From Diadema antillarum (taxonomy: Eukaryota), in the NCBI RefSeq assembly GCF_040938485.1, contig NW_027272364.1:62001-126000 (forward strand): a stretch of 64,000 bases of DNA, read 5' to 3'. Under the pieces are notes generated by a model that was not told where the DNA came from, did not search any database, and saw only the letters and a program-made list of their open reading frames with translations. Both the position numbers and the translations under genes were made by a program. Each line of letters starts with the position of its first letter. Within the stretch, counting starts at the first letter, position 1. Positions 12,099 to 15,000 of this stretch are shown in pieces.

Positions 12099-15000
12099 CA
12101 GCAGAGAGCAGCTTTCAACTCGAGGTCTTAACCCTCGAATCCGTTGCTACTCTCCTGAAAACCAGCTTGTGCAGAGGGCAAAATAGACCAATGCCAGGAA
12201 TCTCCAACCAGCCGCCTGCTGAATGGTTGGAAGCAGTCTGGAATATGTTGTACAAAGAGAGTCCGGACAATCTGTCCTTATTTGAAGGGATACCTCTCAT
12301 TCCGCTTCCAGACACAAACGCTTCCGAAGTTACTCTCAAACCGCTTGCAAAGATGTCTGCTTTAATTGTCAAAAGAAGTGGAGAGTCAACTCTGGATAAA
12401 CATCTTGAAGATGTCCTTGTTAAGATTGGCATCGACATTCTGAACCATACAGATTACGTCATCAGGCACCCTTCAATAATGTCCCAAGGTTACATTCAGC
12501 AGCCGGTTTCAGATAGTATTCTAAGGGCAACACTGAACACAGACCGCAGTTCTCTTGTCAGGAAGTTACAAGACCTTAAAGGACAAGTTCACCTTCATAA
12601 ACATAAGGATTGAGAGAATGTAGCAATATTAGTAGAACACATCATTGAAAGTTTGAGGAAAATCAGACAATCCGTTCAAAAGTTATGAATTTTTGAAGTT
12701 TTTGTGCAGTACCCGCTGGATGAGAAGACTACTGCAGTGTATGAATAACTTAGATGTCACATGCGTACAACAATTCAAGGAAAATATAAAGAGAATTTCA
12801 CAAAATTCCATCTTTTGAAAAAAGTACCCATTCCCCTGACTCGTTACCGACAAATGTTATGGGTAATATTATTCCCCCTTCCTTTAGAAAGAGGCAAGTC
12901 AAGTGCTCTTTTATTATGCGAAAAAAGTGAAAATATGTTGAATTTTCTTTTACATTTTCTTTATACTGTTGTACGCATATGACTCACAAGCTGTAGTAGT
13001 CTCCTCATCCAGCGGTTCCAACACAAAAATTTAAAAAATTCATAACTTTTGCATCGATTGTCCAATTTTCCTCAAACTTTCACTGATGTGTTCTACTAAT
13101 ATTGTTGCATTTTCTCAATCCTTATGTTTATGAAGGTGAACTTGTCCTTTAAGGATAGCGAACGAGCCCTTTTGAGCGAATATATGGGAAATGCAACAAT
13201 CAATCACTCAGCCCGTGATCTATTACTTTCTCTTCCACTCTTCAAGACTCTTCAGGGTTCTGGCGTCTCGTATTCACCCATATTGAGTGCAGCGGAGTCA
13301 ATTGGTTACATTGACATTTCTGCAAGTGAATCTCAAGAACTCCCTAAACCACTAAAGTTACAAAGACCTGTTATCGAAGCGGAACACAATTCGAAACCTC
13401 TCCTGGACAAATTGAAAATCGTTCCTCATCTGTCAAGGTTCGACATGATCGAGCATGTAACTGAAGAAATACATGAAGGTGGTTTGTATGACAAATCGGA
13501 TGTTCAAAGTGTTACACTGTGGCTCCTGTGGCACTGGCATGAAATTAAACATAAATGCGAATCAAGCAAGCATGTGCTCCAAAAACTGCGGTTTGTTCCT
13601 ACAGACAGCGTCCTTTCAACGCTGAAATCACCTTCTGAACTTCTTGACGTCAGGGATCTAACACTCCGAAAGCTATGTAAGGGCCAGGGATTCTTTCTAA
13701 TTGAATCTTTCACAGAGCCAGTGGTCCTTTCAGCTCTAGGCCAACTTGGCATGAGGGAACAGGACAGGGTAACTGCGGACGAGGCAATTACATGTCTTGA
13801 TATCGTTTCAGAATCAAACAGTGTTGATCTCGCTCGCTCTTTTTTGGAGTTCCTTGCTAACAATAGGAGTCTTTTGTCCTGCAATTCATCACGACTTTCT
13901 GACACTGTTGCAGCATACATGAAGAACAAACCCTGTATACCTTACAAGCAGGTTCAACCTCCATTCTATCCCTCTCACCTCCGTTGGTATCATATGCCTT
14001 CTTCATTCCTCTCCACTCCAAATGAGACTATGCTGCTGACAAAAGAGAATTCCATGCTGTGTGGCTCAATAGTTCCACTCACTGCAGTTGACGACAAACT
14101 CTTCCCATTATTTGAAGATCTTCAAATGGCTTCAAAGAAACCAACTTTACAAAATGTGATAGAGCAGCTGACGGAGTGTGTCCTACTCACCCAAGAATCC
14201 GATGAAGTGTGTCCCATAGAACTTCCACCAATGGTAAAAAGAATATATGCTTTCCTCTTGAACAAATGGACATTACAAAGAGAGAGAGAGAGTGTATTAG
14301 AGAGCTTGAAAGCAATTAATTCTCCAGTATGGAACGGCGACGGGTTTTCAGACCCAAGACAGATGTGCATAGGTGATCTGCCATTTGATATGTCGCCATA
14401 TATGACACAGATTCCTTCTGTCATGCGTGAATTTGAAGATCTTCTTCGTGATCTTGGAGTGAAGTCGACCATGAATGCTAATGTGGAAACATTGGTTGAC
14501 ATTTTGCACGAAGTAAAGAAATCCTGTGATCAATCAAAAGAGAATGATGCTACTTTTCATAAAAAGCAACTTCATCTAGTAATGCAAATACTAAAAGAAC
14601 TCCACACAATTGGGGAGTTGCCACAAAACATGCAAAATCGTATATTGGTGCCGACAGAAGCTGAAGGCTGCCATTTGATACCGGTAACGGACAGTGCGTT
14701 TATTGATAGACCTTGGCTAAAATCGCTTGTTCATGAAGAGCAGTCTGAGGATGGAAAAACATTTACTATCATTAGTCCTCTTGTAACAGCGGAACTTGCT
14801 GAGTTTTTGCATGTCCCTCCTCTCAGTCGCTTGCTGTTGGACGCTGATGATCTAGAAGAATTTACGCAGGCAGGTCAGACAGAACCTCTGACTGTACGAA
14901 TATGGAACATCCTGAAGAATACGTATGGAGACTCTGCCATTTTCAAAGAAATGATACAGAATGCTGAGGACGCTGATGCCACAGAGGTCCGATTTCTGAT

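What the first reader, a model, noticed from the sequence alone, without database searches (positions are those of the whole stretch)
12576..13153. MITE inside sacsin coding sequence: exact removal restores the frame, and it could also be spliced out as a new intron
Seen: deleting 12580-13152 (element + one TTAA) gives CAA GAC CTT AAG GAT AGC GAA (..LQDLKDSERALL..) in frame. The apparent ORF break and the start of the 2,444-aa ORF (MFMKVNLSF) are therefore transposon sequence. A GT at 12587 in the left TIR (phase 0) and two AGs at the right end (13134-13135 and 13152-13153, each after pyrimidine-rich sequence) would both rejoin in frame; the second only changes K to KGQ. Inference: this is either a knockout lesion or an introner-like intron gain. 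The donor (GTTCAC) is weak and the ~190-bp inverted arms would form a strong RNA hairpin that brings the junctions together.
Basis: partly seen in the sequence, partly recalled or inferred. Interest (0 to 1): 0.7.

Follow-up and report, generated by a model that had tools for sequence, protein, structure and literature searches.

The report
Young transposon insertion in broken sacsin allele
A 569-base mobile element has recently landed in the coding sequence of one of the two copies of a giant sacsin-like gene in a sea urchin. That copy already carries three other stop codons, so this is an ordinary gene-breaking insertion and not a new intron.

Summary
Window 12580-13148 is a 569-bp non-coding hairpin-shaped element, a MITE (miniature inverted-repeat transposable element), with 171-nt inverted ends and TTAA on both sides.

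- **Family size and age.** It has about 5,600 copies in this assembly. 30 sampled copies have a median pairwise identity of 98.1%.
- **Empty site.** The genome is the uncollapsed diploid Diadema antillarum assembly. The other haplotype (contig C277, 98.6-98.8% identical, colinear over 64 kb) has the exact empty site with one TTAA. So do contigs from four public DNA runs. Paralogues and two NCBI-named sacsin-like proteins read straight through the site.
- **State of the gene.** The filled haplotype has three more in-frame stops (9678, 20456, 21092). All three are sense codons in C277, and the first lies upstream of the element. C277 has its own stop and two 1-bp deletions. dN/dS between the haplotypes is 0.52.
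- **Splicing.** No GT-AG pair can remove the element exactly. Both proposed sites lie inside a very stable stem (whole-element fold -293 kcal/mol). Of 30 family copies, only this one sits in a long open frame. No RNA run holding the locus was found, so splicing is untested.

Verdict: a recent, heterozygous, TTAA-targeting (piggyBac-type) insertion in a decaying gene copy. Intron gain is unsupported.

The parts
12576..12579 (.). Left copy of the TTAA target-site duplication
   Evidence: 29 of 30 family copies have TTAA on both sides. Empty sites hold a single TTAA.
12580..13148 (.). 569-bp non-autonomous foldback MITE (AGGACAAGTTCACC...GGTGAACTTGTCCT)
   Evidence: At least 40 full-length copies are 98-100% identical. 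The ends occur about 5,600 times as exact 27-mers. No stop-free frame reaches 100 aa.
12580..12744 (.). Left long terminal inverted repeat
   Evidence: arms of 171 nt, 88% complementary, counted with the flanking CCTTAA. One search shows near-complete pairing.
12984..13148 (.). Right long terminal inverted repeat. It contains the ATG (13124) of the apparent 2,444-aa ORF.
13149..13152 (.). Right copy of the TTAA target-site duplication
12611..12613 (+). First in-frame stop (TGA) met when the exon is read into the element (..LQDLKGQVHLHKHKD*)
12099..12579 (+). Upstream part of the interrupted sacsin-like exon
   Evidence: It aligns to residues 648-804 of the NCBI-named paralogue P0001.
13153..20455 (+). 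Downstream part of the same exon, holding two SACS domains
   Evidence: It aligns to residues 806-3244 of P0001.
10591..12098 (+). Genuine phase-1 intron of the gene (G|GTAAGT ... TTACAG|C). Used here as the yardstick for real splice sites.
   Evidence: A gap at the same place exists in all paralogues. All four laid runs read through it, so they are DNA.
12587..12588 (+).
   Evidence: 2 of 7 consensus positions. Paired in the stem.
13134..13153 (+).
   Evidence: in frame; 56-61% pyrimidines upstream. Paired in the stem.
9678..9680 (+). In-frame TGA upstream of the element on the same haplotype. It is TCA in haplotype C277.
   Evidence: At position 9679 run X1 shows only the stop letter, X2 shows both letters, and X3 and X6 show only the sense letter.
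20456..20458 (+). In-frame TAA (CAA in C277)
21092..21094 (+). In-frame TAG (TAC in C277)

Best explanation
A member of a young, very abundant family of TTAA-targeting, non-autonomous foldback transposons inserted into a TTAA inside the largest exon of a sacsin-like gene. The family is most likely mobilised by one of the intact piggyBac transposases of this genome. The insertion is on one haplotype (contig C1476) of the sequenced Diadema antillarum individual. The other haplotype (C277) and all four other DNA data sets examined carry the unoccupied site.

The element brings an in-frame TGA 32 bases past its left end, so it is a disrupting insertion. The allele it hit is dead anyway. It carries a nonsense codon upstream and two downstream that are absent from the other haplotype. 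The other haplotype has disabling changes of its own. So the locus is a dispensable sacsin paralogue with segregating null alleles, and the MITE is one more lesion.

**Shown:** the element's anatomy, the duplication, copy number and youth, the natural empty allele, the extra stops, and the poor splice signals.

**Inferred:** the piggyBac superfamily assignment, the order of the lesions, and the absence of splicing.
For: **Anatomy and duplication.**

**Family.** 5,620 forward and 5,580 reverse exact 27-mer ends. 30 copies have a median pairwise identity of 98.1%, and the window copy differs from the majority letter at 3 of 569 positions.

**Empty allele.**
- C277 is colinear with the whole window and 98.6-98.8% identical across the gene.
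- It reads ..GACCTTAAGGATAGC.. at the site.
- The joint 12575>13149 (skips 573) is present in runs X1, X2, X3 and X6.

**No ancestral intron here.** Paralogues on C2, C21, C1031, C126 and C147, and the NCBI-named proteins P0001 and P0002, are uninterrupted at the site.

**Other lesions.**
- Stops at 9678, 20456 and 21092 are sense codons in C277 and align to sense residues of P0001.
- C277 has its own TAG and two 1-bp deletions.
- dN/dS between the haplotypes is 0.52.

**Other loci.** The predicted empty site of family copy L008 is found once, on another contig. That of L022 is found in 37 copies of a host repeat.

**Possible transposase source.** At least 30 intact 620-aa piggyBac transposase frames occur in the genome.
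Against: - No RNA data could be laid on the locus, so lack of splicing is inferred, not observed.
- The element's ends (TTAA|AGGAC...GTCCT|TTAA) do not carry the CCC...GGG termini that I recall as usual for piggyBac.
- dN/dS of 0.52 differs from 1 (p = 0.011), so the gene was under some constraint for part of the time since the haplotypes split.
- The two 1-bp deletions of C277 lie in short homopolymers and were seen in none of the four runs. They may be assembly errors. That haplotype may then be broken only by its TAG.
- Contigs cannot show the filled allele in other individuals, so its frequency is unknown.
Confidence: 0.85

Rival explanations
1. Nascent, introner-like intron. The element is removed from the pre-mRNA by splicing at GT 12587 and AG 13153 (or 13135). 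That would leave 2 (or 8) extra codons, and the hairpin would bring the two sites together.
For: Both joins are in frame and stop-free, and the acceptors follow moderately pyrimidine-rich sequence. Introners derived from DNA transposons with duplications and inverted ends exist and are commoner in marine organisms. Some add a few codons (10.1101/2022.06.06.494994).
Against: - The donor CAA|GTTCAC matches only 2 of 7 consensus positions and none of +3 to +6. The gene's real intron has GTAAGT.
- Exact removal is impossible.
- Donor and acceptors are base-paired inside the 171-bp stem. By my own knowledge, sites inside a stem are usually hidden from the splicing machinery.
- The allele has a TGA upstream and two stops downstream, so there is no selection for splicing.
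- Only 1 of 30 family copies lies in a long open frame, whereas introners are enriched in genes.
- That survey found introners in only two animal groups.
Confidence: 0.04
2. The insertion is old, and the empty sites are revertants made by the precise excision typical of piggyBac-type elements.
For: By my own knowledge, piggyBac excision restores a single TTAA without a footprint. An excised site and a never-occupied site therefore look alike.
Against: - All four runs hold the empty site, and they carry two organism labels.
- All paralogues are empty.
- The window copy is only 3 of 569 positions from the family's majority letters.
- The X1 contig has window-like letters left of an empty site, although contig phase is not reliable.
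Confidence: 0.04
3. C1476 and C277 are a recent segmental duplication (two loci) and not two alleles. On this reading the element marks one paralogue instead of being heterozygous.
For: After haplotig purging the assembly still had 34.9% duplicated BUSCOs, and the authors discuss possible true duplication. Identity falls to 78-91% over window 27.5-43.6 kb.
Against: - The assembly is documented as about twice the haploid size, with 84.4% duplicated BUSCOs.
- The two contigs are colinear over all 64 kb.
- Divergence of about 1.3% is below the genome-wide heterozygosity of 2.52%.
- Other loci and transposase hits also come in contig pairs.
Confidence: 0.08

Closest known systems
piggyBac-derived MITEs of animals, such as the coral CMITE families linked to piggyBac-like transposons (PMC2872659)
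   Same: Short, non-coding and high-copy. They have terminal inverted repeats, strict TTAA target duplication and empty sites with one TTAA. Intact piggyBac transposases are present in the host genome.
   Different: This element has very long (about 170 nt) inverted ends, and almost all of it is self-complementary. Its termini are AGG...CCT instead of the usual CCC...GGG (my own knowledge). No autonomous partner with matching ends was shown.
Introners: transposon-derived introns of algae, fungi and a few animals (10.1101/2022.06.06.494994)
   Same: A DNA-transposon-like element inside coding sequence. Its length plus the duplication is a multiple of three. In-frame GT...AG pairs lie near its ends.
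   Different: Introners carry or recruit working splice sites and are enriched in genes. Here the donor is poor, exact removal is impossible, the sites are buried in a stem, and the family is not enriched in open frames (1 of 30). The host allele is already null, and no spliced RNA is known.
Foldback-type elements and long-inverted-repeat MITEs
   Same: Near-complete palindrome: the reverse strand matches the element itself at 74-77% over its full length.
   Different: By my own knowledge, classical foldback elements have subrepeat-rich arms and other target duplications. Here the target is strictly TTAA.
Transposon insertion alleles in exons (ordinary null alleles)
   Same: A heterozygous insertion that brings a premature stop, with a natural empty allele.
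   Different: Nothing essential differs. The only special point is that the allele carries three further nonsense codons.

Membership tests
MITE (non-autonomous class II transposon) | Terminal inverted repeats | tested here: met
   171-nt arms, 88% complementary. The ends are conserved in all 30 copies.
MITE (non-autonomous class II transposon) | Target-site duplication, with an empty site that holds one copy | tested here: met
   TTAA on both sides in 29 of 30 copies. A single TTAA at the natural empty sites of three loci.
MITE (non-autonomous class II transposon) | Short, with no transposase coding capacity | tested here: met
   569 bp. The longest stop-free frame on the + strand inside it is 77 codons. 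Almost all of the sequence is self-complementary. The minus strand was not listed separately.
MITE (non-autonomous class II transposon) | High copy number of homogeneous copies | tested here: met
   5,620 forward and 5,580 reverse exact ends. Median pairwise identity 98.1%.
piggyBac superfamily | Strict TTAA target and footprint-free empty site | tested here: met
piggyBac superfamily | Canonical CCC...GGG terminal bases (my own knowledge of the family) | tested here: not met
   The ends read AGGACAAG...CTTGTCCT.
piggyBac superfamily | An autonomous element in the same genome that shares the inverted ends | not testable with these tools
   At least 30 intact 620-aa DDE_Tnp_1_7 frames exist.
Introner | Family copies occupy intron positions in many genes | tested here: not met
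   Only the window copy, of the 30 best copies, has a long open frame on both sides. The longest one-sided frames next to five other copies (six frames) have no significant Pfam match. The sample is small and no gene annotation was available.
Introner | Carries or recruits working splice sites at or next to its ends | tested here: inconclusive
   GT and AG exist in frame, but the donor matches 2 of 7 consensus positions. No exact-removal pair exists. The sites are paired in the stem.
Introner | Spliced out of the mRNA | not testable with these tools
   No listed run that holds the locus is on record as RNA. The four runs laid are DNA.
Sacsin family (host gene) | Repeated SACS/HATPase-like domains plus C-terminal DnaJ and HEPN domains | tested here: met
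   SACS domains (E 5.9e-37 and 1.7e-152, the second with two stretches), DnaJ (22.4 bits, below Pfam's cut-off of 27.8) and HEPN (E 1.1e-13). Colinear with 'sacsin-like [Diadema antillarum]' proteins.

The most novel reading that the evidence does not exclude
An intron is being born in an animal. On this reading the freshly inserted, still polymorphic TTAA-MITE is removed from sacsin-like transcripts at cryptic sites in its inverted ends (12587 to 13153), leaving two extra codons. That would give a before-and-after pair of alleles in one individual.
Probability: 0.04. Interest if true: 0.6.

Novelty: new member of a known kind. Interest (0 to 1): 0.2.

Why it matters
It matters little beyond this genome. 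It documents a young and probably still mobile TTAA-targeting MITE family of about 5,600 copies in a keystone reef sea urchin whose repeats are largely unclassified. It also gives a clean filled-and-empty allele pair within one individual.

It shows that this sacsin-like locus carries null alleles on both haplotypes. Annotators should therefore treat it as a pseudogene or a segregating null. They should not start a gene model at the ATG inside the element. The attractive idea of an intron caught at birth is not supported.

Tried and rejected
- **RNA evidence.** The one search for sequencing runs returned no RNA holder. The one read-laying run showed that all four runs, including the one of unknown kind (X6), are genomic, because their contigs run through the real intron. 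Three small runs with the species label hold next to none of the exon's words, which is no proof of silence.
- **Short protein fragments.** I looked for fragments that might come from transcript contigs bridging the site. None was found for the 159-aa upstream piece.
- **Joined models.** I sent no joined model (element deleted or spliced) to any search tool. The pieces were searched apart. Joins were made only inside scripts, to test frames and stops.
- **Autonomous partner.** The link to a piggyBac element through shared ends could not be tested, because no more genome letters could be fetched.
- **Full neutrality.** This is rejected. dN/dS is 0.52, p = 0.011 against 1, so the decay is recent and not ancient.
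- **Rfam.** The only match is a sub-threshold match of the element's core to the long-hairpin family MIR8562 (52.8 bits against a gathering score of 211). I take it as a generic hairpin resemblance.
- **Depth as copy number.** The depth ratio would suggest tens of thousands of related copies. I did not use it, because the tool warns against reading depth that way.

Full report
**What is there**

Window 12580-13148 is a 569-bp element that begins AGGACAAGTTCACC and ends GGTGAACTTGTCCT. TTAA flanks it at 12576-12579 and at 13149-13152.

- Its outer arms (12574-12744 and 12984-13154) are 171 nt long and 88% complementary. A weaker inner pair (12756-12816 and 12923-12983) makes almost the whole element a palindrome.
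- As RNA it folds into one long stem of -293 kcal/mol, with a z-score of -26 against shuffles.
- It has no coding capacity. The longest stop-free frame on the + strand is 77 codons.

**It is a mobile-element family, young and abundant**

- A DNA search of the window's own genome returned 40 scored full-length copies at 98-100% identity, out of 792 first-look candidates.
- The 27-base end (TTAA plus 23 bases) occurs 5,620 times forward and 5,580 times in reverse, mostly in pairs about 577 bases apart. The reversed control occurs 0 times.
- Among the 30 best copies the median pairwise identity is 98.1%. The window copy differs from the majority letter at only 3 of 569 positions.
- In 29 of the 30 copies TTAA stands on both sides, while the sequence beyond it differs from locus to locus.

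**The empty site exists**

The pieces on either side of the element were searched apart as proteins.

- Five paralogous loci (C2, C21, C1031, C126 twice, C147) have the two pieces exactly one codon apart inside long open frames.
- One nearly identical locus, on contig C277, has them next to each other.
- That 36-mer occurs exactly once in the genome, at C277:675384-675419.
- The same test on other copies gave a single empty site on another contig for L008, 37 empty copies of a host repeat for L022, and none for L013.

So the TTAA duplication and footprint-free empty sites are a property of the family.

**The two contigs are two haplotypes**

- C277 is colinear with all 64 kb of the window. It is 98.6-98.8% identical across the gene and less similar elsewhere, with large insertions and deletions.
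- Two proteins named 'sacsin-like [Diadema antillarum]' come from this assembly. One sits on a contig of 2,677,953 bases, the length of C126.
- The genome's size of 1,754,659,819 bases is exactly that of GCA_040938485.1.
- Its authors describe that assembly as uncollapsed, retaining both haplotypes. It has 84.4% duplicated BUSCOs, 2.52% heterozygosity and a haploid size of about 0.7-0.9 Gb (PMC13511894).

The sequenced sea urchin is therefore most likely heterozygous for the insertion.

**Other individuals**

Contigs of four public runs, under two organism labels, were laid on 9500-15499.

- All four run through the real intron, so all four are DNA.
- All four contain the joint 12575>13149 that skips 573 bases, which is the empty allele.
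- Contigs break at high-copy repeats, so they cannot show whether the filled allele occurs in these samples.
- X1 carries letters found in neither assembled haplotype (13445 G, 14735 A), so it is probably another individual.

**The host gene and its state**

- The pieces carry SACS domains, a sub-threshold DnaJ match and a C-terminal HEPN domain.
- They align colinearly, piece after piece, with the 4,179-aa NCBI-named paralogue P0001. P0001 reads ..NKLQGLKDSERDLF.. straight through the insertion site.
- The window haplotype also has in-frame TGA (9678), TAA (20456) and TAG (21092) in otherwise well-conserved coding sequence. In C277 these codons are TCA, CAA and TAC, and each aligns to a sense residue of P0001.
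- The TGA is a real variant. At position 9679 run X1 shows only the stop letter, X2 shows both letters, and X3 and X6 show only the sense letter.
- C277 has its own TAG (window-equivalent 19199) and two 1-bp deletions in coding sequence (10172 and 13186). The deletions lie in short homopolymers and appear in none of the four runs, so they may be assembly errors.
- Between the haplotypes there are 26 synonymous and 48 non-synonymous differences. dN/dS is 0.52, p = 0.011 against neutrality. Constraint is relaxed, but the decay is not old.
- No protein of 1,339-4,260 aa from this locus is in the protein collection, although its paralogues are. That fits a pseudogene call, or no call, in the public annotation.

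The MITE therefore sits in an allele whose reading frame is already closed about 2.9 kb upstream of it. In X1 the stop letter at 9679 and an empty site with window-like letters on its left occur together. This hints that the TGA came first, but contig phase is unreliable.

**Could it be spliced?**

- The five equivalent ways of cutting out exactly 573 bases start with TT, TA, AA, AA or AG and end with CT, TT, TT, TA or AA. No known intron type fits.
GT at 12587 joined to AG at 13152-53 or at 13134-35 stays in frame without stops and turns K into KGQ or KGQVNLSFK.
- The donor CAA|GTTCAC matches the MAG|GTRAGT consensus at only 2 of 7 positions, and at none of +3 to +6.
- The gene's true intron (10591-12098, phase 1, conserved as a gap in every paralogue) uses G|GTAAGT and TTACAG|C.
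- The donor and both acceptors are base-paired within the long stem. From general knowledge of splicing, sites inside a stable stem are hidden and not presented. Such a duplex is more likely to attract RNA editing or RNA interference. This last step is inference.
- At the family level, only the window copy among 30 lies in a long open frame. The longest frames next to five other copies have no significant domain match. Introners, by contrast, are enriched in genes and bring working splice sites (10.1101/2022.06.06.494994).
- The decisive test, RNA junction reads, could not be made.

**Which transposase?**

Strict TTAA targeting with footprint-free empty sites is the hallmark of piggyBac. The genome holds at least 30 intact 620-aa piggyBac transposase frames with near-identical scores, plus further families. 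However, the element's termini are not the CCC...GGG that I recall as usual for the superfamily. I could not fetch the flanks of the transposase genes to compare ends. The assignment is therefore the most likely one, at about 0.7, and not a shown membership.

**Verdict**

The reading 'knockout lesion' is right, with the qualification that the allele is null several times over. The reading 'introner-like intron gain' has nothing in its favour beyond the presence of in-frame GT and AG dinucleotides. This is an ordinary, well-documented kind of event: a new member of a known kind of element, in a decaying member of an expanded gene family.

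Noticed in passing
window 9678-9680, 20456-20458, 21092-21094: Three in-frame stops (TGA, TAA, TAG) in the sacsin-like coding sequence of this haplotype. All are sense codons in haplotype C277 and align to sense residues in the NCBI-named paralogues. The TGA segregates among the public runs.
   Followed up: yes
G000:C277, window-equivalent 19199, 10172 and 13186 (L031, L040): The other haplotype has its own TAG and two 1-bp deletions in short homopolymers. 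The deletions appear in none of the four runs laid and may be assembly errors.
   Followed up: partly
window 11500-11899: A different high-copy repeat inside the real intron. Summed contig depth is about 1,000 times that of the flanks in all four runs.
   Followed up: no
window 12704-13024 (minus strand): Sub-threshold Rfam match of the MITE core to the long-hairpin miRNA precursor family MIR8562 (52.8 bits, gathering score 211, E 4e-8). Probably a generic hairpin resemblance.
   Followed up: no
G000, for example C640:1281385-1282503 and C1581:296503-297627: At least 30 intact 620-aa piggyBac transposase frames with near-identical scores, plus 597-, 700- and 586-aa families. This suggests recently active autonomous piggyBac elements.
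   Followed up: partly
window 3101-3104, and 27465-43660: Against haplotype C277 there is a 9.6-kb extra stretch in C277 at window position about 3101. A 16-kb region is only 78-91% identical, with internally repeated matches around 27770-28550.
   Followed up: no
L022 (G000:C364:449187-449755) flanks: This MITE copy is nested in another repeat. The predicted empty site occurs 37 times in the genome, and a 158-codon open frame abuts the insertion.
   Followed up: partly
window 13445: Both assembled haplotypes read A here, while all four public runs read G.
   Followed up: no
L002/L003 (C844/C823) and L020/L025 (C515/C714): The same MITE insertion, with identical flanks, is present on two contigs. 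These are insertions shared by both haplotypes, unlike the sacsin copy and L008.
   Followed up: partly
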